Shown: positions 52,111 through 64,000, numbered from the stretch's first letter. The stretch is DNA of 64,000 nucleotides from Amoeboaphelidium protococcarum X5 (GCA_023515725.1 JALDTO010000137.1:82241-146240), one strand, 5' to 3'. The notes: generated by a model not told the origin, from the letters alone. A program made the numbers and translations.

Positions 52111-52381
52111 AGTATTGTGTCTTTATTTCAGCATTAAATCATACAGTGATCATTATAAAGAGAAATTAAGTTGTATTTTCAAAGTGCAATGTTATAAATA
52201 GCATTTTACTTAGCCGCATCATCCTATCAATCATGCTGATGGTGATCAGTCGGGATCACAATGAAACAAACGAGACGAGGCGTGGCATTTAAGTTTAACT
52301 ACAGCGATAAATGTATAGTACAACGAAAGTCAACCATTATAAGTTGTCGTAGGATAGTGTATTTTCAATAAGCATAAGATG

Positions 52382-53983
52382 TCACTTTTTCTGGCACGAA
52401 ATGAATTCCTTCTTAAAAGGAGTGCTCGATAATCCTAAAGATTCTACCACGGTGTAGAATTCGTCAGTTCTCTTGTTAAGAAAGAAGCATACTCTTGACT
52501 TTAATTCTCTCAGGACCGTCTCCACCTTCTTTACAGATTCTTCATACTCCAGGTCACTGCCCATGTCTTATTGCGCATATTAGTCGTAATCTGCACGCAG
52601 CTATTCTACAATGTACTTTCGAATGTGACGCGGACGGAACTTTTCAATTAGATCCTATTAGGCAGAGACGCCGTCACTCATATGAATACCGACAAATTTC
52701 AGTACTTTACTCACACCATTCCAGGCATTGCTTCCATCGATGGAGGAAGCTGGTAAGATTAGCCAGTTTTTAGGATTTGGGAAAAACTTTAACCATAATT
52801 TTATCTAATCAGCATATATGGATCGCCCCAGATAAGCACCTTCTAACGCCATATGCAAATGGATAACATCATGCTCCATCAGCTTAGAGTCGGCATTTAT
52901 CTTTAGAGATTGGGGCAGCATACATCGAACTGTAGTGTCTTTCATCATGTCCTTGACCGAGTCTGGTGTGGGAACACCACTAAGAACAGGTCTGGCAATC
53001 TGATAACATTTCTCCAACTCTAAAGTCTCTTTTATGAACACATCCCTCATCTTTTTAGCAAAATCCATAGCCAACTCTGCCACTTTACGCCGTCTGAGTT
53101 ATACGGACTCTCCAGCAGCTTCAACCAACTGAATGAAACAATCTTACGTGCTCCATGCAGATTAAATGTCACATGTGGTCGCCTACCACTTCATGTTGAA
53201 TGCGGAGACTGCTCTTTCGTATGGATCTCTTACCAACACTACAATTTTGGCTTATGGTACGAAGAGAGATGCAAAGAACGGTGCTAATGGATTAGCCAAG
53301 TAATTTGGTACAGCTTCACCGCGAATTTGTTCATCACCATTTAAGCAGCTCACGAATTAGGAATCATACCATTCAAACATGCCATTTAAATCTTCCACAC
53401 CACTGGGCACCCAATAGCCGTCGTGATACTTGCTGTAGTTTTTTGCAGTAAGCATAAGCGGTAGAATAGCACTGAACACGTCCAACTCTTTACGGAATTG
53501 CGGCATTGATACAACACTGCCACCGACGCTACTGCTCCTCTCAGACTAGTACTTTTGGACATCTCGCAGGTAGGCACTGATAGACGACGTTCCGCTCTTC
53601 TGTGCGCCAATGATCAGGAAACGTGTGGGACATTGCATACGATAAGACAGACTGCTGAGGTTCAACATTTATGCAAAATTCTGAATTAAAGGAGGCAGAT
53701 CTTGACCTGTGCTTTGTAAGCTAGTCTTAAACTACAGCACCTTCTAGCGGTAATCATCATCTCCATCGTCGCTAATACGAAAGTTTCTCCTTTTGAAAGC
53801 TATTCTACTATTCTAGACAACACGGTCGCCACCCTCAGAAGGTCCATGTTGATCCACTGCGCGACCATGAAACAAGGCCTTACCGTACTGACTGAGAGAG
53901 CTTCTACCGACAAGTAGTACCAGGAGAAAGCTAACAAATAAAATTATTTTAATAACAGTCAAAGCTCGTCTTTTCAAAGCCAT
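52382..53983 (-). CDS. Type II membrane PAPS-dependent sulfotransferase (HS3ST/NDST-like domain), 533 aa
   Basis: N-terminal KRR plus TM. 5'-PSB motif FLIIGAQKSGTSS, GEAVPNYL, 3'-PB motif KIVVLVRDPYERAVS, then YADQIKLWLKFFP. Confidence 0.88.
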
Positions 53984-54212
53984 TACGGTAATTAAGTTGG
54001 TGAAAGTATAGTCTCTATGTATTTATGCAAACGTAGCGATCGTGACTAAACGATTGTACACAACGCTCGCGTGATTTGAAGTTTCAACTCTACTCAGCCA
54101 CACGTCAATTCGACTTGCAATTGGAAGACATAGTAATGTAAATATAAAAATTAAGTTTATAAAAAGACACGACTTATATCTGTGTAAGTCAAAAAGCACG
54201 ATCAGTATTAAG

Positions 54213-55343
54213 TCATGAAGTGTATTCAGATGGCATAATGTCACCTTCAATGCCAGCGATAAGGTTTCTCACAGCCAGATCTGACATCATCTCGCGCGTC
54301 TCAATCGTTGCACTACTGATATGCGGTAATATCAAGACTTTCCCACTTTCAATCATGCCGATTAGAGGATGATCACGGGGTAGAGGTTCAGGGTCAGTCA
54401 CATCCAGAGCAGCTCCAGCGATAGTTCCCTATTGCAGAGCTTGTACCAGACTGTCAGTGTCCACGATTCCACCCCTTGCGCAGTTGATCAGAACAGCACT
54501 TGATTTCATGAGGGAGAAAGCCTCACTATTAAACACCTGGCGAGTTTTATCATTGAGGGCACTAGTAATGATCACCACATCTGATTTCTACAATAACTCA
54601 ACAAAATCCACTTTTCTCACTTCATTTAACTGAAAATACTAGCCAATAGTCTTGAGTCGCTCTTCGACATTCTACTTGCTCCATTACGTACATTCATCAA
54701 CTTTAGGTGTAGATTGTTAGTTGGTATCAAAACCGGAGTTAGAGCCAGCATTAAAGTCGCGGTTTGTAGACAACGATGATGAAGAGTCGGTGTATAAGAT
54801 ACTACCCACACCGAAAGCCAGCAATCTTTCAGCCGCAGCTTACCCAATTCTGCCCATACCAAAGAATCCTACAGTGATACCAGTCAACTGATGACCACAC
54901 ATCCAAGTAGGATCGAACGAGCTAAATGACGCGGTGGTAACACTCTTGACAGCCTCCACGAATCTACGATAATGAGCAAGTAAAAGAGCGACACACAGGT
55001 CAGCACAAGCATCTGTTAGAACATCAGGTGTATATCCAACTCGAACATTTGAATTTGGTCCACTTTCGCCACGCTAAAACTGAATATGATCAACACCAAC
55101 ACTCAGGGAAGAGACAACCTTCAATTGAGGACCACACTCGCGTATCAGCTCATCATCAATCTTATCGTTAATTACACACAAAAGACCGACAGCTCCCTTC
55201 ACCTGTCTGAGTAGTTCACTTCTGCTCATTGCACAATTCGCCGTGTGTTGAACCAAATCATAGCGATCCCTCAGCGATTCCAACTTGTTCTAAGCCTATG
55301 GTGTAAGCTTACGCGTAGCTACAATTTTCTACTTGGATGACAT
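54213..55343 (-). CDS. GRHPR: Glyoxylate/hydroxypyruvate reductase (D-2-hydroxyacid dehydrogenase), 376 aa
   Basis: [63 protein letters not shown]. Confidence 0.92.
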
Positions 55344-55563
55344 TACTCTCTTGTAGTTAATAAAACGATTCTCTTCACCAATAAATCTCACCAAGCCGAT
55401 CTCGCTCGCTCTCTTTCCCCTTTGAAAGATTCTTCAGCGAGATCAGTCAGAGATTAGTGATTACTAAGAGGGGCACCTGGCGATTATTCTAATCTATCTT
55501 ATCTTAATTTTAGTACTCTACTCTACTCTCTGCGTAAATAAAGTATAAGAAAGCTGTGAATAT

Positions 55564-57360
55564 ATGTCAGGACATCAATTGCAGTAGTGGAGGTAGAGCT
55601 GTCTCGCTTGCTAGAATATACCTGGTGTTGGAATAGCCACCCTCTGGCCGTGTCTATTTGGAATAGATCTGAAGCAGAAGCGTGAATAGTACCGTTAGAC
55701 TAAGAACGAACTTAATGACAAATTATCTAATGATAGCGATGCTAATGCTATTGATGATCCGCTATCAGATGACATTTCATCTAAATGGAATATGCAGCAT
55801 CAGCATGATCAACTCCGTGAGACTATTCTACTGGACGTGACCAGGACATTTCCCGATTTCAACTTCTTTAGGCTGGATTCAACTCATCAATTGATGGTCG
55901 AGATTCTGTTTACATGGTGTATATTGCGATATAGTAATAATGATAAGGATATCTCTGGTAACAGCAATGTTAATCGTGTTATTGATAAAGATTTTGGGTA
56001 TAGACAAGGTATGCATGAGATTCTGGCACCTATATTATTCCATCTAGATTTGGAGCAGCGTGTCGCGGGTGAGGATGATGAGGCTTTAGATTTAGAAGCT
56101 GATGGTTATGTTCTATTTGATTAGCTGATGCAAAGTCTATGTCAGCTCTACAATTATCATAATAACTGTAAGACATCTCAAGTGAATTCTTAGTTTTCTA
56201 CTAGAAATAATAATAATGCTTTGAAGGGAGACATTGAAGTTGAACATTTACCGTTCTAGAATTCAAAAAATGGTGGTGGTATCAGTAAATAGAGAACTTT
56301 ATTACTCGAGACGTGTGATCGAATTTAGAATCAATATCTGCGCTTACTTGATCCTGAACTTTATCAAGTGATTGTTCAGAATTAGATTGAACCCTCGATT
56401 TACATGATTCGATGGTTGAAGTTGCTATTTGGACGTGAAGTCTCATTTGAACTGATTCCCATTCTATGGAGTGCTCTGATAGCTGATAATTGCTCTAATC
56501 TGTTGAGTCTTAGTGAATGGATCTGTATCTCTTTAATACTGCTAAATCGAGATGCATTGATTTAGTTTAGAGATGATCAGATTATGGTTATGCAGATTCT
56601 GATGAAGAGTAAAGAAGTGTTGGATGTCGAGTTATTGGTTTAGAATGCTCTAATGTACAGAGATTAATACTAGTCACTTGACAAGACCAAGGTCAAGTCT
56701 ATAGATTATCAACCGGCCGCTGAGAGACGAAAGCCTGTGTAATAGTAATAAGAGTAGTCGCAAGGTAGAACTGATGTTTGGCAAAGTACATAAGACTTGC
56801 TGTAAAAGGCTGTAAGAAAGACATTGGTAGAGCCGCTGTTATTGGGAGGCTCACGAAATACTGTGCCTGGTAAAGCTACGCTGTCTGATGGACACGCATC
56901 TGCTGCCATTGAACGTCTATAATTGTAACCATCTCCTCCGATAGATGCACGAACTACTACACATAATCTGAGAGTCATAGATCCAGTTATTTTGTAAGAT
57001 AGCTGTGAGCAATTGCGATCGTCGATTGTAGCAGTGGAGTAGATTGTTCAGGATATTCGAATTGATAAGGATAAAGAGTAGATCATTGCAGATTTAGAAA
57101 GTCATTGTGCATTATTGAAATCACTTTTGCGTACCTTATCTACTGAGGGAGACAATGATAGTTTTAATGAGGGTGTATCTCATTAGAATGGCAATGTTGG
57201 ATCTTCAATGCCATTCAAAACTACCGTGTCTTCTCCAAATAATGGCTTAAAGAAGTAAAATGGCGGTATCTATCCAAGTTCTATTGAAGATATTACAAGA
57301 GAAGTGAACAACAGGAATAGCAATTCTCCTGCTAAATCAAGGCTGTTCAACTTACTTTGA
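55564..57360 (+). CDS. TBC-domain Rab GTPase-activating protein (TBC1D5-like), 598 aa
   Basis: ILLDVTRTFP (Arg finger), GYRQGMHEILAPI (Gln finger), IEPSIYMIRWLKLLFGRE. Confidence 0.88.
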
Positions 57361-57428
57361 TAATGGCCGTATTACATACATTTTTGTAGAATAGAGATAA
57401 AAACTTTAATATGTCATTCCCATTATTT

Positions 57429-60400
57429 TCATTTTTAACATGACCGTTTGTGCTTTAGAATATCTACAGGTTTCAAATAGAGAAGTTATTGACAACTAGA
57501 GCATTGATACTCTCGACATCCTTTCGGTACGGTGGTTGTAGCCGGCTATTATTATGAGCTTGCTTCGAATACACCTTACTAATTACCGACTTCCATCTCA
57601 GGTTGTTACTACTGCTTCTGCTAAAGTTATTAATTTGATTGACACTACACCAAGTGCTTCTAAACAAACTTTTCTTAAACCATATAATCTTTACAGCATA
57701 TGGGACAAGTCCAGGCAGATCGAGAATTTGCCATTTGACCAATTTGGCTCGTTGTGTCTACATTTGCTTTAGCGCGTTTACTCTTCTTGGTAGTTTATGA
57801 CTGGGATTAAGACCCATTAATATCCATATCATCGCTACCACTAACAATGAGAGGAAACTGAAGTGTGCCATAATTAAGGTATTCTGTCACACGATATCCA
57901 TATTTCAGTGCTTCTGGATTGCAAATCTGTTATAAAACTTACATCACTTCTTTTGACGGGCAATCAGACGGATAAAGGAGATCAGTATCTTAAGGCCGTA
58001 ATATATCCACTGAGTACTTGACTTTCATTCTCTCTATCATCACATCCATAGCCATAAATCTATCCAGTACTGACAATAAATCTTGTAATTTTACTTTACT
58101 CCGTTTATCCCAAGATTTCAGGTGTAAATCTAACAGCTATTGTGGTAGATATGGATACATCTCCTGAGGAATGGGATCAATTTAAGAACGCTTTTACCTC
58201 GAGGATGCACCACTGTAAACCTAGTTAATCTTGATTTGAGACAACTTCTCATCTGTCAAGCTCTATAAACAGGTTCGAGCCTCAGCAGTCAATTGTAATA
58301 ATTTCAAGACGCATTCACGAATGTTCAATCGATCCTACTCCAATTAATCCACATCCACTATAGATTAGCTAGTCATGCGACGATCATTCATAAAAGAGAC
58401 GATAATCCATTCATCAAATACGACATGAGATAGGGCAGTATTAGTATCGATGCTCTGACAGAATAGGAGCAGAGTTTACAACGCAGCAGCTTTGTATACA
58501 TTTACCAGATACGGCCGCCTAGTCTCCAGGACATTAAGATAACACAGAATTTCATGTTGCGCTTGCTTGTTAGGAAACTGTTGCTGATATGGTGATGCTT
58601 CATCTTTAGAGAAATTGTAAGAACTATCCGTCTACTGAGAGCGATCGACATCCATTGCAGCCAAATCAACATTACCCTCTTCAACATTCATTGAAGATAG
58701 ATTGCTATTGCTATTGACACTTTATTATTATTAATCGGACTTGACAGTACTAGTAGAAGCACTCAACCGCATGAAAGCAGAATTATCTTGAGCAAATGTT
58801 CCGCCAGGATGCATGACTAGCCGCTTTCGATGCTGTGAGTGATAAACGCGATTCTGTAAACTTCTCGCCGCATTTCCGCTATCTGGAATGGCAATATTAG
58901 GATACAATCCACTTGATAACACAAACTTCAATATATCCACGCTCTCCTCAGTAATAGTATTCTTATCATAACGATTTAAATCTTGAGCATACTTGTCCAC
59001 ATTTAACTTGTACGCGAATTCCAGCGAATGATAATCTTCAGCCTCAAGTTCAGCGTCTGCATCAGAGGAGTTCTCATTGTACTGTCTACTAATCTAATTA
59101 TCTCCAACTTCTCCTTCATCCTCTTTTGCCGCAGACTGTTATACCAGTGAGGAGGATGACTATCTGGAAGCATATTTCTACCTTTACATCAAACTCTACA
59201 GGACACGCTTCTCCGTATTTTGTCGCTGATACTTGTCGCGAACATTTAAATAAGTCCTCAGAATCTGTCTATACTAATGGACCAATTTGGATATCTCATA
59301 CAATCGATACTCATTAACACCATTACGCTTACACCATTTCTGACTGGTGGTGGATGAATTCTGATGTTTTGTACTCAACCACTGAATATAAACATTAAGC
59401 AGTGTAAATGGGTCTCCGTGCAGAGAGTAGAGAGATGATCTACTAGCAACCTATTCCGGAGTCAAATCAGCCGCGTTAAGTAGTGGAGATTGTTAAAGAG
59501 ACAGAGCGGCGGCCATGATCAGAACAGGCTCCACCACGTCAAATACTGAGCTCATTAAGAGCATTTTACCAATGATGACATCCACGGGTAGCATGGCGAG
59601 CATATACCCAATCGGTGTCAATTGACCAACTGAATCCAGAGCATCAACTCCATGCAGCAGCTTTAATGAATAATCTATATGATCAATTGGCGGTGGCTCT
59701 ACAAACTAGAAATTATACGGATCAATCCCAAGATCCATCTTTTTCATGCTCAAAATCACCTGGTCGAGGGATACTCTCATAATCTCTGGCACTGTATACT
59801 CATTCAGCCCGTCATACTCTTCCTCAGAGTACAAGCGAAAACAATATCCACTCTGAGTTCTCCCAGCTCTACCAGCTCTCTACTTTGCCGAGGCTTGAGA
59901 TATCCAAAACTCTGATAATTTGGACAGACGGCTCTGCAAGTCATAATCCATCTCTCGAGCAGTACCAGAATCAATGACGAATCGCACACCATCTATAGTG
60001 ATACTGGTCTCTGCAATATTAGTGGAAATGATGCATTTGCGGGCACCAGGTGGACACTGGACAAACACCTTGTCTTGATCCGAGATTGACAGGGCACTGT
60101 GCAGCTTCAGCGGTATCCACACGCCATTCTCATCAGCGTACTACTTGACTTTATTGTACAGTTTATTAATCTCCGCCACACCAGGCAAGAATATCAACAG
60201 ATCACCACTTTCATCAATGGGAACCTCTGATTCAATCCATTTAAGAATCTCCAAGTAATGGTTAGGATCAAAAATTTTATTCTGGGCTGGTATAGACTCT
60301 GGAATCCGCTATGATCGTCTTTACTATACCACTTTCCTATCTGTCAACTGCGCATCGTCAGTTTAGTCACCTGGTGCCAAGTACAGAATATCTACCGGGT

Positions 60401-61355
60401 GCAATCGACCAGGAACTTCAATCAAAGGCGCATTATCGAAATACTACTGGAATAGCTCTGCATTGATAGTGGCAGACATCAAAATCACCTTTAGATCCTT
60501 CCGCTTCTGACATATCAACTTTATAACACCAAGAAGGAAATCACAATTCAGGTGACGCTCATGCACCTCGTCTATAATCACAACATTGTACTGAGATAGT
60601 AAAGGATCACCATAAATCTGCTTAATCAAGATACCCTCAGTCACGAACAGAATCTGAGTAGCCTCCGATCTATCACTCTCAAATCTGATCTGGAATCCAA
60701 CCTCAGACTACAAAGTGCTCATACATTCATACTAGACGCGTTTACACAGAGACATGGCGGCAATTCTACGTGGTTGAGTCACTACAATTTTCTCAAATCC
60801 AGCCTCGCGAATATACTGCGGTACCTGAGTACTCTTACCAGCGGCAGTCTGAGCACTGATTACACAGACTTAATTCTCTTTAATCATATCGATAATCTAT
60901 TACTTGTACTGATAAATAGGTAAATTACGTCTACACTCTGCAATCGAGTCTCTACTCTCCTGAAGCTGCTCCATCTTGAACTCTTTATATAGATCCAAGC
61001 ATTACCGGACGCGTCCCATCTCAGTCGGAGGCACTTTGACTTTGACATCTGCCGGTCCTTGGTGGTCATCAGATAAATTGTACAGATAGCGTTCGTAAAA
61101 CTCTTGAAACTCGTAATACTCGGCAGAATTATATTTAATCTCAGACTGTTGGGATTAAAACAGTTCTCTATCTATCTGTTAAGACCAAGGCATCTAATCT
61201 CCCTTCATCCACTGCCGCTTCCTGCGTTCCCTTTAACGTCCAGTGATGATATCAGGTGTTGCTGTTCTACTCCCAGTTTATCCATCCTATTTCACCTTGA
61301 TGTACACTTTAGATCCATCTGGCAGATACCTAAATTCTTACTATTAATCTGCCAT
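57429..61355 (-). CDS. DHX34: DEAH-box RNA helicase DHX34-like, 1308 aa
   Basis: [62 protein letters not shown](TAG)-[16 protein letters not shown]-terminal PVDILKHK. Confidence 0.88.
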
Positions 61356-61557
61356 TCTATTCTTCGAAATATGAAAACTTTCTAATTACTAGAATTTATG
61401 GTTTTAAAAGTGACAAGAAGGAGGCACATGGGGAAAGAAGATGGTCAGATCTCTCTCTGATCTTTCAGAGTAAAGAAAATGACTCCAAATATATATATAG
61501 ATTAACAAATATCTATTTATTAAAATAACAAAATATATACAGTACGTACACACAAAG

Positions 61558-62607
61558 TCAAAAGTCTATAAAAGCGGCCCCATAGGCATCAGGAGAATTG
61601 TCGCCAATCTCCTGCGTGATGTCCACTTCTTCATACTTGTCAAAGTTGCGAGTATCACCGGCATGCTGGACATTGGGCCGAAACGGTGCTGCAATCTGCC
61701 GAGCTTCAAGACGCGAGAAATCGATCGACTTGAACCATTTGTGTTTCTTCACCTCCTCTGATCCACCGCGAAGATTTCCCAATCGCTTACTCTTGTCCGT
61801 GAGCAGTCGTTTCACCAAATCTTTCGCGTCCTTCTCAATCCAGTCGGTCCACGCGATGCGGCCGTCGAGAATCTTCTAATAAATGCCCATCGGAGAATCG
61901 TCAAGGAATGGCGGGAATCCGTTGATCATTTCGTAGATTAGCACGCCGAACGACCACCAGTCCACAGCTTTCCCATGACCAGAACTTTAAATAATTTCAG
62001 GCGGAAGGTATTCTACAAAATTACTGATAATTTCATTTAATAAATGATGATGAGCATATAGGTGAATAATCATCAAACAGCAAAACTTACCTGGAGTTCC
62101 ACATACTGTCCATGTTCGATCAAGCACAACTTTGGCGAAACCAAAATCTGCAATTTTAATGTGTCCCTCAGAATCTAGCAGCAAGTTCTCTGGCTTCAAA
62201 TCTCTATAGACAATAGACTTTGAGTGAATATATGCAATGGCACTAGCTATTTCTGCTGCATAAAATCGAGCCACTTCATTACTGAAACGGCCAGCCCGTC
62301 GAAGATGAGAGAACAATTCTCCTCCTGGTACATACTCTAGCAGAATGTAGACATTACGAGAGTCTTGAAAGTTGGCCATCATGTTCACTATGAATGGATG
62401 TCGCAGCATTGTCAGCACACTCTTTTCCGACTTTATATGTTCCACTTGTTTCAATCTGATAATTTCCGATTTCTTCAATATTTTAAGAGCGTAATACTAT
62501 GTGGAGTGAATTACAAGCATGACTCGACCAAAAGTTCCTGTTCCCAATGTGGACACATACTAAAAGTTATAAGGATTAAGCGGAACAGCCGCAGCAAGAA
62601 TATCCAT
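61558..62607 (-). CDS. cAMP-dependent protein kinase catalytic subunit (PKA-C/PRKX-like); intron 62013-62090
   Basis: [48 protein letters not shown]|[12 protein letters not shown]-terminal FIDF. Confidence 0.95.
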
Positions 62608-62788
62608 AAGCAATTAAAGATATTTGAATCAAATGCGGTTAGAAGAGGTAATAACAATCAGTTTGATACTGAAACAGAAAACAAAGAGAAACCAATCCAC
62701 CTTGGAAGTAAGTAAAGGCCCTGTAAAATATAATAACCAAGTAGAATAAATTTTCTATATATCAAATCAGCAAACCAAAAAATACATT

Positions 62789-63901
62789 TCACTGCTACTC
62801 TTCTTATTCGGCGTCTTATGCTGCTGCGTCTTCTTCCATATTCTTCAGTTTCTTCTGGATACGTTCCCACAGGAGGAGGAGCTCATTCTTCTGCTTTGGT
62901 TCAACAACCTCAAGCACGAACGTCTCCGTGACCATAGTTTGTGATACATTGAGATTAGTCATACTAGGCGAGTTGGCATTAGATGATGACGCTAGAGAGG
63001 AAGATGGTGCTTGGGTGGATGTAGAGGTGAACGAGTCAGCGATGCTAGGGCGCTAAGATAACACTCTATGACCCATTGACATTGATCGAGATAGAGTACC
63101 ATTCTTACCAGCTGACGGTCTCTTTTTCAGTTTGGTTGGCAGATTACCGATTCTCTCATTATCTGCGCCACCATCCACTTCTTCAGATAACGCCTCAGCA
63201 TTGTCAACCACGGAATCTTCGCCATTCTCGGCAGCATCTTCAACAATCGTTTGTTGCAGACTACTTGTACCAGAATCTACACTGGCTCTACCCGAGACTC
63301 TCCTTGGAGGCAGTGGAGGCAAAGGTAAAGGCGGTCGTCTAGGAAGCTGACTAGTTGCATCACTATCCTGATTGCGTTGTTAGTCTTAACCAGAGACCTC
63401 TTGCGCTGACTTTGCATCATCACTCAATTACACACCAAGTCCGGTGGACGCCACACTGTGAACAACAGCCGGACTCTAGGTGATTAGACCAGCTTCCATT
63501 GAGGTCTCAAATTTAATCTGCTCCATCATAGTGGGTATATCCGTTTTAGCGGGAACGAGCGAGCTTTATCTAGGCAAAGGGCGGTTGAAGTGTCCATGAC
63601 CAGTTATAGTGGTTGAACGTTTTAGTGATCCCTTTTCAATTGTCGGTAGAGTGACATTAGACAGGGATTACATACTTCCAGAGACTTCAGCATCCGCACG
63701 GTCAGATTCATTCTTCTGGGAAGATCCTTTCGATTTCAGCCTCTCCAGCGCCAACTTCTCGATATTAGCCAAATCAAGTGAGAATGAATCTGCAGCATTA
63801 GCCGACTTTGTCTATTTATCCTCCGCAGTTACATTAACATCGACAGTTTGTTTAACAGGGCTAGTTGGAGCGGATTATGCATTCTCCGCAACAGACGGCA
63901 G
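62789..63901 (-). CDS. 5'-truncated gene: ~370-codon disordered S/P-rich C-terminal region whose frame runs into the telomere
   Basis: Under TAR=Gln the frame is open from TGA 62789 to the repeats (..LPSVAENAQSAPTSPVKQ..RPPLPLPPLPPRR..LLLLWERIQKKLK..). The first in-frame ATG is at 63673. Confidence 0.7.
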
Positions 63902-64000
63902 GGTAGCAGGGTAGCAGGGTAGCAGGGTAGGGCAGGGTTAGGCAGGGTTGGGCAGGGTTGGGCAGGGTAGGGCAGGGTTAGGGCAGGGTTAGGGTTAGGG
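63901..64000 (+). repeat. Telomeric repeat array: variant units grading into TTAGGG
   Basis: (GGGTAGCA)x3, GGGTAGGGCA, GGGTTAGGCA, (GGGTTGGGCA)x2, GGGTAGGGCA, GGGTTAGGGCA, (GGGTTA)x2, GGG. The G-rich strand runs 5'-3' to the window end. Confidence 0.9.

What the first reader, a model, noticed from the sequence alone, without database searches (positions are those of the whole stretch)
62789..64000. Telomere joined directly inside a protein-coding frame: candidate chromosome break healed by de novo telomere addition
Seen: the last gene points away from the telomere and its frame is open up to and into the repeats. There is no AT-rich intergenic or promoter stretch like those before other genes. 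The 76 codons upstream of the first ATG (63673) read like the rest of the protein (SAPTSPVK, LEKLALERLK-like helix). The junction ACGGCA|GGG shares GGCAGGG with the repeat units, a plausible priming microhomology. Inference: the 5' part of the gene and everything distal were lost and the end was capped by telomerase, either by accident (for example loss from a redundant homeologue) or by programmed fragmentation.
Basis: partly seen in the sequence, partly recalled or inferred. Interest (0 to 1): 0.8.

Follow-up and report, generated by a model that had tools for sequence, protein, structure and literature searches.

The report
Gene cut short by new telomere
This chromosome end was made by a break inside a RhoGEF signalling gene that was capped directly with telomere repeats, and most other assembled chromosome ends of this two-subgenome microbe look like healed breaks too.

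Summary
The genome reads TAA/TAG as sense codons; only TGA stops. The minus-strand frame from TGA (62789) runs open into the telomere at 63901.

An open frame alone is weak evidence, about 30% by chance. The second copy of the region is decisive. C181 is 92% identical up to base 63900 exactly, then continues for 76 kb. Its frame stays open for 806 more codons that encode a DH (RhoGEF) and a PH-like domain. The window keeps only the last 369 codons.

Contigs from another strain and from an environmental sample (about 97% identical) also read through 63900 into the missing part. The source sample shows no such continuation. The junction shares GGCA with the telomere units.

At least 6.5 kb just beyond the break has no second copy in the assembly. 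Further out, the counterpart lies on contig C155, so not everything distal was lost.

The pattern is genome-wide. Nine of 13 tested telomeres sit at sites internal in the other copy. One is a clean two-sided break inside a Mak21/NOC1-like gene, with both halves capped and kept. First-stage notes on other pieces of this genome had flagged similar ends.

This is a known process, chromosome healing, seen here at unusual density.

The parts
62789..63900 (-). Remnant of a RhoGEF (DH-PH) gene: the last 369 sense codons plus the TGA stop (62789-62791). It has no start codon of its own, no promoter region, and no DH or PH domain.
   Evidence: Frame open under TAA/TAG = sense. It is 92% identical, without indels, to C181:239653-240764, the 3' third of a 1176-codon ORF. 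dN/dS against that copy is 0.08. Pieces of the missing part hit PF00621 collinearly.
63671..63673 (-). First in-frame ATG of the remnant. It is an internal Met (..EVSGSM..) in the full-length copy, not the gene's start.
   Evidence: The 75 codons upstream of it evolve as coding sequence (dN/dS 0.13).
63897..63900 (+). GGCA, the last four bases of the pre-break sequence. They are also the 3' end of telomere units (GGGCA / AGGCA / TAGCA) and form the microhomology at the addition point.
   Evidence: GGCA is followed by TACC.. in C181, TACCC.. in run X6 and TTCCC.. in run X5, but by GGGTAGCA.. in the window.
63901..64000 (+). Telomere tract at the contig end, G-rich strand running 5'->3' outward. 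Units are irregular: GGGTAGCA near the junction, GGGTTAGGG(CA) distally.
   Evidence: The same repeat types are found at 16 contig ends, and none of the listed matches is internal to a contig.
42745..63900 (.). Block collinear with the second copy C181:220765-240764 (87-92% identity). It ends exactly at the junction.
   Evidence: blastn.

Best explanation
Proposed mechanism. In the lineage of this strain, one of two diverged copies of a chromosome suffered a double-strand break. I call the broken copy 'A' (contig C137) and its partner 'B' (contig C181). The break fell inside the coding sequence of a roughly 1175-codon DH-PH RhoGEF gene, between the codons for ..VIKGM and PSVAENAQ... The exposed 3' end ...GACGGCA paired through GGCA with the telomerase template and was extended with the organism's irregular telomere repeats. 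This made a stable new chromosome end (a neotelomere).

Consequences. The remnant of 369 codons has lost its start, its promoter and both catalytic domains, so it is most likely a silent gene fragment. The intact B copy supplies the function, which is why the loss was tolerated.

What is shown: the truncation relative to B and to A-like relatives; the exact junction; the microhomology; a genuine telomere-type tract; and the absence from the assembly of a second copy of the next 6.5 kb or more.

What is inferred: telomerase as the adding enzyme; silence of the remnant; timing after the two subgenomes came together; and the fate of the other side of the break.
For: 1. Similarity to C181 (92%, no indels over 1112 nt) stops at exactly window 63900 = C181:240764. 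C181 then continues for 76 kb.
2. In C181 the same frame is open for 1176 codons. The stop-free pieces upstream of the junction hit PF00621 RhoGEF at profile positions 1-20, 31-62, 72-123 and 151-180, in order, for a summed score of about 71 bits. There is also a weak ECT2_PH hit.
3. dN/dS of the remnant is 0.08, and 0.13 for the 75 codons between the junction and the first ATG. The telomere therefore abuts true coding sequence.
4. Run X6 is another sample and study of the same labelled organism; its contigs lie at 95-99+% to the stretch (97.5% in the piece at 63645-63802). Run X5 is a 2013 biofilm metagenome with a 2235-nt contig at 97.2% identity. Contigs from both pass 63900 and continue with TACCCTTAATAAC.. 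/ TTCCCTTAATAAC... That is the RhoGEF continuation, 2 of 30 bases different from C181.
5. Source-sample runs X1 and X3 cover 63835-63935 and show no loose end and no 'unlike' continuation.
6. C181:240765-242264 and 242265-247264 have no second copy in the assembly.
7. The repeats are the genome's own telomere type and occur at contig ends.
8. Other ends behave the same way. C57, C98, C233 (both ends), C146 (start) and C36 end at sites internal in the other copy. C142-start and C154-start map to C162:201830 and 201835, which are the two sides of one break.
Against: - No raw reads could be laid, only Logan contigs, which drop rare variants and cannot be counted. A minority intact A chromosome in the culture is not excluded. 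The contig bridging 63900 in X1/X3 is inferred from the depth in the last bin and the lack of loose ends; it is not listed as a record.
- Absence of the A copy of the next 6.5-7 kb rests on the assembly alone.
- The more distal A-type sequence is not lost. It lies on C155, whose contig ends in a multi-copy element 3.5 kb past the homology boundary. The event may therefore be part of a larger rearrangement rather than a simple terminal deletion.
- No RNA data exist to show that the remnant is silent.
- The date is open. The break postdates a split of roughly 2.5-3% from the X5/X6 lineages, which need not be recent.
Confidence: 0.85

Rival explanations
1. Assembly artefact: a chimeric read or a mis-join attached telomere repeats to an internal site, and the real A chromosome continues through the RhoGEF gene.
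For: Only contig-level read evidence was available. The telomere tract in the assembly is short, about 100 nt.
Against: - Short-read contigs of two runs of the source sample cover the junction bin with no unlike continuation, while X5 and X6 do show one.
- No A-type copy of the next 6.5 kb exists anywhere in the assembly, although both copies are assembled elsewhere.
- Eight other telomeres show the same interstitial placement, including a reciprocal pair that fits to the base. An artefact would not produce that.
Confidence: 0.04
2. Programmed, developmentally regulated chromosome fragmentation with telomere addition, as in ciliates or some nematodes. The window would show a processed 'somatic' end, with an intact germline-like copy existing elsewhere.
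For: - There are many neotelomeres in one genome.
- One break is perfectly clean, with both products capped and kept.
- All junctions end in (G)CA.
Against: - Another strain with the same organism label has the site unbroken (X6).
- No intact A-type copy accompanies the broken one in the assembly.
- There is no shared motif and no enrichment of telomere-like seeds in the 100 nt next to the junctions.
- Junction positions look like random genome positions with respect to open frames.
- The terminal (G)CA cannot be separated from the first telomere unit except at three junctions.
Confidence: 0.07
3. The A arrangement is ancestral and this is a natural chromosome end. The B copy (C181) would have gained its continuation by fusion, and the gene would start at Met 63673.
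For: Karyotypes of diverged genomes can differ by fusion as well as by fission.
Against: - A single conserved ORF with a DH domain spans the site in C181.
- The 75 codons upstream of the Met are under purifying selection.
- A-like lineages X5 and X6 also continue through the site.
- There is no AT-rich promoter stretch.
Confidence: 0.02
4. The break is real, but it is one breakpoint of a larger rearrangement of the A chromosome, such as a translocation or a transposon-mediated exchange on the other side, rather than a simple terminal deletion.
For: - The A-type counterpart of C181 from about 247.9 kb outward is present on C155, in reverse orientation.
- C155 ends 3.5 kb later inside an element with 100%-identical copies on C158 and C303 and a 96% copy on C179.
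- Only about 7 kb is missing.
Against: This does not conflict with telomere healing of the C137 side. It only changes what happened to the other side, which the assembly cannot resolve.
Confidence: 0.45

Closest known systems
[quoted passage not shown]
   Same: In both, telomere repeats are added at breaks in unique sequence, at transposons or elsewhere. In both, the loss is tolerated because the homeologous chromosome of the other parent is present. That paper counts 15 events among hybrid progeny against 1 in haploid intraspecific progeny.
   Different: Here the events are fixed in an assembled natural or cultured genome of a distant lineage with a one-stop-codon code. At least nine ends are affected. 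One break kept both fragments. The cause is unknown, whereas many of the Cryptococcus events arose in msh2 mutant crosses.
Telomere healing at double-strand breaks in budding and fission yeast (SiRTA hotspots, GCR assays; PMC10055226, PMC7026635)
   Same: Telomerase acts on a resected break using short complementarity to its template. The chromosome is truncated on the centromere-proximal side.
   Different: Yeast hotspots carry TG-rich telomere-like tracts that recruit Cdc13. No enrichment of telomere-like sequence was found within 100 nt of the 14 junctions here; only 2-4 nt of terminal match was seen.
Human terminal deletions and cancer neotelomeres (22q13 deletions, PMC3136441; long-read neotelomeres, PMC11293586)
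   Same: Telomere repeats are joined directly to unique, often genic, sequence with a few bases of microhomology. The gene at the break is truncated.
   Different: Those are somatic or de novo pathological events in diploids. Here the event is a stable feature of a microbial genome with two diverged subgenomes.
Programmed or age-related chromosome fragmentation with telomere addition in ciliates (for example Paramecium, PMC13076228) and in nematodes with DNA elimination (the nematode case is from my own knowledge)
   Same: There are many new telomeres added at internal sites, and both sides of a break can receive telomeres.
   Different: No germline/soma pair of forms, no conserved breakage motif and no reproducibility across strains was found here. 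The organism is fungus-like (TTAGGG-derived repeats, opisthokont genes), not a ciliate, despite sharing the TAA/TAG = Gln code.

Membership tests
Neotelomere / chromosome healing by de novo telomere addition | Species-type telomere repeats at the terminus, G-rich strand running 5'->3' outward | tested here: met
   63901-64000 carries the same irregular units as 15 other contig ends. No listed match is internal.
Neotelomere / chromosome healing by de novo telomere addition | The repeats abut unique sequence that is interstitial in an intact reference copy | tested here: met
   C181 continues 76 kb past the equivalent base. X5 and X6 contigs read through it.
Neotelomere / chromosome healing by de novo telomere addition | Sequence distal to the breakpoint is missing from the broken chromosome | tested here: met
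   No second copy of C181:240765-247264 exists in the assembly. More distal A-type DNA does exist on C155.
Neotelomere / chromosome healing by de novo telomere addition | Short microhomology between the broken end and the telomere repeat | tested here: met
   GGCA is shared by the pre-break sequence (C181, X5, X6) and the repeat units. At the C142/C154 break both 3' ends read ..CA.
Neotelomere / chromosome healing by de novo telomere addition | The junction is present in primary reads and is the major form in the strain | tested here: inconclusive
   Only Logan contigs were available. X1 and X3 cover the junction bin without loose ends, but no bridging record is listed and read counts are impossible.
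Neotelomere / chromosome healing by de novo telomere addition | Addition depends on telomerase | not testable with these tools
   Inferred from the repeat type and the microhomology only.
Programmed chromosome fragmentation (ciliate / nematode type) | A conserved cis motif at break sites | tested here: not met
   The 14 junction flanks share only a terminal (G)CA. There is no enrichment of telomere-like words, GGG, GC content or GC skew in the proximal 100 nt.
Programmed chromosome fragmentation (ciliate / nematode type) | Intact and fragmented forms coexist in one organism, and the same sites are used in every strain | tested here: not met
   No intact A-type copy exists in the assembly. Strain X6 has the site unbroken. 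Rare forms cannot be excluded.
Dbl-homology RhoGEF (PF00621), for the gene itself | A DH domain followed by a PH domain | tested here: not met
   The full-length copy on C181 has one: four collinear piece hits to PF00621 plus a weak ECT2_PH hit. The window copy lacks that whole region, and its two largest pieces hit no Pfam family. The window holds a fragment of a RhoGEF gene, not a RhoGEF.
Ordinary telomere-adjacent gene starting at Met 63673 | Homologues begin at that Met, with non-coding DNA upstream of it | tested here: not met
   The Met is internal in a 1176-codon ORF. The upstream 75 codons have dN/dS 0.13. GC content there is 44% against 34% in intergenic DNA.

The most novel reading that the evidence does not exclude
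The break in this window may be one of many. After its two subgenomes came together, this genome would have been broken at numerous essentially random places and healed by telomerase. At least one fission, inside Mak21/NOC1, kept both capped fragments without losing a base. That would mean its chromosomes segregate without a single fixed centromere (holocentric-like or easily re-formed centromeres), or that an unrecognised breakage-and-healing programme exists in a fungus-related protist.
Probability: 0.15. Interest if true: 0.85.

Novelty: new member of a known kind. Interest (0 to 1): 0.6.

Why it matters
It is a clean natural example of chromosome healing, with the intact state preserved three times over for comparison: the second subgenome, another strain and an environmental relative.

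It also shows how a genome with two diverged copies tolerates loss of gene halves, even of a normally essential ribosome-biogenesis gene.

The density of such ends matters more. Nine of 13 tested telomeres are affected, and one break is reciprocal. This makes the karyotype history and the centromere type of this fungus-related lineage directly testable.

It is also a practical warning. 'Genes' at these contig ends are fragments and should not be annotated as full proteins.

Tried and rejected
- Canonical (TTAGGG)4 has no match in the genome. The telomere is irregular, so broader patterns were needed.
- Two exact-pattern scans of metagenome contigs for an intact orthologue found nothing.
- A tRNA scan of the repeat-rich stretch distal to the lost interval found nothing.
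- A search for a SiRTA-like telomere seed near the junctions was negative.
- The open-frame argument was tested against a null model and has no weight by itself.
- The apparent 'heterozygous' letters in source-sample contigs at 62855 and 63506-63515 are the letters of the C181 copy. They come from cross-laid B-type contigs and are no sign of a second A allele.
- The original genome paper for the most likely organism (an Amoeboaphelidium-type aphelid, judged from GC content, genome size and code) is not in the library. The organism's name and whether these ends were described before remain unverified. No paper in the library joins 'aphelid' and 'telomere' on this topic.
The other copies at the further break sites could be placed by coordinates only, not read.
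- No protein read through TAA/TAG was sent to any search tool. Only stop-free pieces were searched by reference, and code-6 translation was done in scripts alone.

Full report
WHAT IS IN THE SEQUENCE

The window is G000:C137:82241-146240 and reaches the end of a 146,240-bp contig in a 23.6-Mb, 346-contig assembly. Bases 63901-64000 are G-rich irregular repeats: three GGGTAGCA units, then GGGTAGGGCA, GGGTTAGGCA and GGGTTGGGCA units, ending in GGGTTAGGGTTAGGG.

On the minus strand, one frame runs from a TGA at 62789-62791 up into the repeats. It holds 12 TAA/TAG codons and no TGA. All three final stops of the neighbouring reading (TAA, TAA, TAG) are passed before the TGA. The genome therefore uses TAA/TAG as sense codons, read here as Gln. 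In the full-length copy of this gene, 56 of 91 Gln positions are TAA/TAG.

The first in-frame ATG is at 63671-63673. GC content in the last 300 nt is 44%, against 34% in the intergenic stretch at 62550-62849.

HOW MUCH THE OPEN FRAME IS WORTH

The open frame is worth little. With one stop codon, about 30% of 76-codon stretches are open by chance (my arithmetic). A random position in this gene-dense window has a median of 223 TGA-free codons abutting it in the best of six frames. The argument needed an outside comparison.

THE DECISIVE COMPARISON

The assembly holds exactly one other copy of 62789-63900, at C181:239653-240764. It is 92% identical with no indels. Window 42745-63900 is collinear with C181:220765-240764, and the alignment ends at exactly 63900 = 240764. 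Beyond that base the window reads GGGTAGCAGGG..., while C181 reads TACCTTTAATTAC... and continues for another 76 kb.

In C181 the same frame is open for 1176 codons, from 243184 to 239653. Stop-free pieces upstream of the junction hit Pfam RhoGEF (PF00621) in order, at profile positions 1-20, 31-62, 72-123 and 151-180. The scores are 18.9, 12.4, 24.0 and 15.8 bits. The next piece gives a weak ECT2_PH hit. The gene is a DH-PH RhoGEF with a long low-complexity tail.

The window keeps only the last 369 codons of that tail. The break lies between ..VIKGM and PSVAENAQ... Against C181 the remnant has dS 0.29 and dN 0.023, so dN/dS is 0.08. The 75 codons between the junction and the first ATG have dN/dS 0.13. 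The telomere therefore touches true coding sequence, and Met 63673 is an internal residue.

READ-LEVEL EVIDENCE

Only Logan contigs were available, laid on 60500-63935.

- Runs X1 and X3 come from one sample and hold the largest shares of the stretch's sampled words (0.83 and 0.78). They are probably the source strain. They cover the last bin, 63835-63935. They show no loose end at 63900 and no share that runs on unlike.
- Run X6 carries the same organism label but comes from another sample and study. It has a contig that reaches 63900 and continues for 193 nt with TACCCTTAATAACTTGCTTCAC...
- Run X5 is a 2013 biofilm metagenome. It has a 2235-nt contig that matches 62096-63900 with 51 differences (97.2% identity) and continues for 430 nt with TTCCCTTAATAAC...
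- Both continuations differ from C181 at 2 of 30 bases, so they are the RhoGEF sequence.
- X6 differs from the window at 4 of 158 bases where C181 differs at 10. X5 and X6 are thus closer to the window's copy than C181 is.

By parsimony the intact state is ancestral for the window's lineage and the truncation is derived. The partial-depth variants in X1 at 62855 and 63506-63515 are C181's letters from cross-laid contigs. They are not a second A allele.

WHAT WAS LOST

C181:240765-242264 and C181:242265-247264 have no second copy anywhere in the assembly. In C181 that interval holds three things:
- the RhoGEF N-terminal 806 codons;
- a small RING-H2-like ORF;
- a 710-codon ORF with NTP_transferase, HAD-like and kinase-like pieces.

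From about C181:247,905 outward the counterpart reappears on C155, at 1,149,428 running downward. It is 87-91% identical there, and 88% at the far end of C181. C155 is 1,152,983 bp long. It stops 3.5 kb past the homology boundary, inside an element with 100%-identical copies on C158 and C303 and a 96% copy on C179.

So 'everything distal was lost' is not correct. About 7 kb is missing, and the fate of the far side of the break is hidden behind a repeat.

MECHANISM

The pre-break sequence ended ...GACGGCA|TACC... GGCA is also the 3' end of the telomere units (GGGCA, AGGCA, TAGCA). The most economical reading has four steps:
1. a double-strand break occurred;
2. the 3' end paired with the telomerase template through 4 nt;
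3. irregular repeats were synthesised;
4. the complementary strand was filled in.

The remnant points away from the new end and has lost its promoter and start, so it is probably silent. The intact C181 copy covers the function. The break and junction are shown. The enzyme, the silence and the timing are inferred.

GENOME-WIDE CONTEXT

Telomere-type repeats occur at 16 contig ends, and none of the listed matches is internal to a contig. They lie at the ends of C57, C98, C132, C137, C146, C200, C214 and C233, and at the starts of C36, C142, C146, C154, C156, C233, C244 and C275. None of the 14 ends examined has a shared subtelomeric repeat. Each joins unique sequence through ..(G)CA|GGG.

I searched the 1.3-1.5 kb next to 12 further ends against the genome.

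| End | Match in the other copy | Status |
|---|---|---|
| C57 end | C249:338,023 (-) | internal |
| C233 end | C200:466,384 of 733,122 | internal |
| C98 end | C146:342,482 (-) | internal |
| C233 start | C205:638,818 (+) | internal |
| C146 start | C264:1,809,798 (-); contig at least 2.49 Mb | internal |
| C36 start | C146:902,013 (-) of 1,100,603 | internal |
| C142 start | C162:201,830 (-) | one side of a single break |
| C154 start | C162:201,835 (+) | the other side of that break |
| C200 end | C88 | partner contig length unknown |
| C132 end | C176 | partner contig length unknown |
| C214 end | C213, partial, in a paralogous family | unresolved |
| C146 end | no second copy | not testable |

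The four bases between C162:201,830 and 201,835 are the CA and TG that I had trimmed from the queries. The break is therefore clean, and the two flanks join in frame (..ILS-M-NDG..). The C154 side carries a CBF/Mak21 domain (PF03914, E = 1e-12). The C142 side carries the gene's start. One gene is split between two capped chromosome ends, and both are retained.

With the window's own end, nine of 13 tested telomeres lie at sites interstitial in the other copy.

Not all of these ends cut genes. The C233 start lies about 90 nt upstream of an intact thioredoxin-reductase-type gene. Junction positions resemble random genome positions with respect to open frames, and no telomere-like seed is enriched nearby.

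One bias should be kept in mind. New telomeres next to unique DNA assemble more readily than old ends with repeats, so the fraction is inflated. The absolute count stands.

First-stage notes on other pieces of this genome had flagged telomeres inside a BRCA1-like gene, inside MAK21/NOC1 and inside other coding sequences. I confirmed the MAK21 case and placed the BRCA1-like end (C233 end).

COMPARISON WITH WHAT IS KNOWN

Chromosome healing by de novo telomere addition is well known.

- The nearest parallel is Cryptococcus hybrid progeny. Fifteen such events were seen there and judged viable because the homeologous chromosome is present (PMC7846113).
- Yeast SiRTA hotspots differ because they rely on telomere-like tracts (PMC10055226, PMC7026635).
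- Human terminal deletions and cancer neotelomeres show the same junction anatomy (PMC3136441, PMC11293586).
- Programmed fragmentation as in ciliates (PMC13076228) is not supported. There is no shared motif, no intact companion form in the assembly, and the site is unbroken in another strain.

The organism looks like an Amoeboaphelidium-type aphelid. It has about 40% GC, about 24 Mb, a TAA/TAG sense code and paired genes about 92% identical; compare the table in PMC10608142. I could not verify the name, and the original genome paper is not in the library.

VERDICT

The event is a new member of a known kind. Its interest comes mainly from the number of such ends in this genome and from the reciprocal Mak21 break.

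Noticed in passing
L025 (G000:C142:1-1533) and L039 (G000:C154:1-1569): These are the two sides of one clean break inside a Mak21/NOC1-like gene, each capped with telomere repeats. They map to C162:201830 and 201835. The flanks join in frame without loss of a base, at CA|TG. The C154 side has PF03914 at E = 1e-12. Both fragments (contigs of 732 kb and 820 kb) are kept, which raises the question of how each segregates.
   Followed up: yes
Window 63901-64000 and 13 other contig ends (L004, L005, L007-L009, L017, L018, L025, L033, L039, L043, L044, L071): The telomere repeat is irregular. GGGCA and GGGTAGCA units lie next to the junction, and GGGTTAGGGCA / GGGTTAGGG units lie distally. (TTAGGG)4 occurs nowhere in the assembly. 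Assembled tracts are only 44-207 nt long.
   Followed up: partly
L009 (C233 end), L033 (C146 start), L018 (C98 end), L017 (C36 start), L008 (C200 end): Further telomeres abut long TGA-free frames.
- C233 end: a RING-finger, BRCT-like ORF of 426 codons runs into the repeats without a stop.
- C146 start: a 496-codon ORF runs into the repeats.
- C98 end: a coiled-coil ORF of 154 codons starts at the repeats.
- C36 start: the last 46 codons of a gene start at the repeats.
- C200 end: an ATG-started frame reaches the repeats after 18 codons.
Pfam gave nothing for the pieces tested.
   Followed up: partly
L088:2100-3576 (G000:C155:1149452-1150928) and onward to the contig end at 1152983: This is a multi-copy element with 100%-identical copies at the start of C158 and on C303, and a 96% copy on C179. 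It is probably a recently active transposon. It sits exactly where the homology between C155 and C181 ends, and it breaks the assembly there.
   Followed up: partly
L077:3578-4156 (+) and L077:4372-6504 (-), i.e. C181:244342-244920 and 245136-247268: Two genes are left with a single copy in the assembly by the loss next to the break. One is a small RING-H2-like ORF (C-x2-C ... C-x-H ... C-x2-C motif, seen by eye). The other is a 710-codon ORF whose pieces hit NTP_transferase, HAD-like hydrolase and EcKL kinase-like families.
   Followed up: partly
G000:C146 (1,100,603 bp) and G000:C233 (777,856 bp): Both contigs carry telomere repeats at both ends, so they are probably complete chromosomes. 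Both ends of C233 lie at sites internal in other contigs (C205 and C200), so C233 looks like a fragment chromosome. C146 is the intact partner for breaks at its positions 342,482 and 902,013.
   Followed up: partly
L044:116-1250 (G000:C233 start): An intact thioredoxin-reductase-type gene (Pyr_redox_2, E = 5e-31) begins only about 90 nt from the telomere repeats. A neotelomere can leave almost no promoter room for the first gene.
   Followed up: partly
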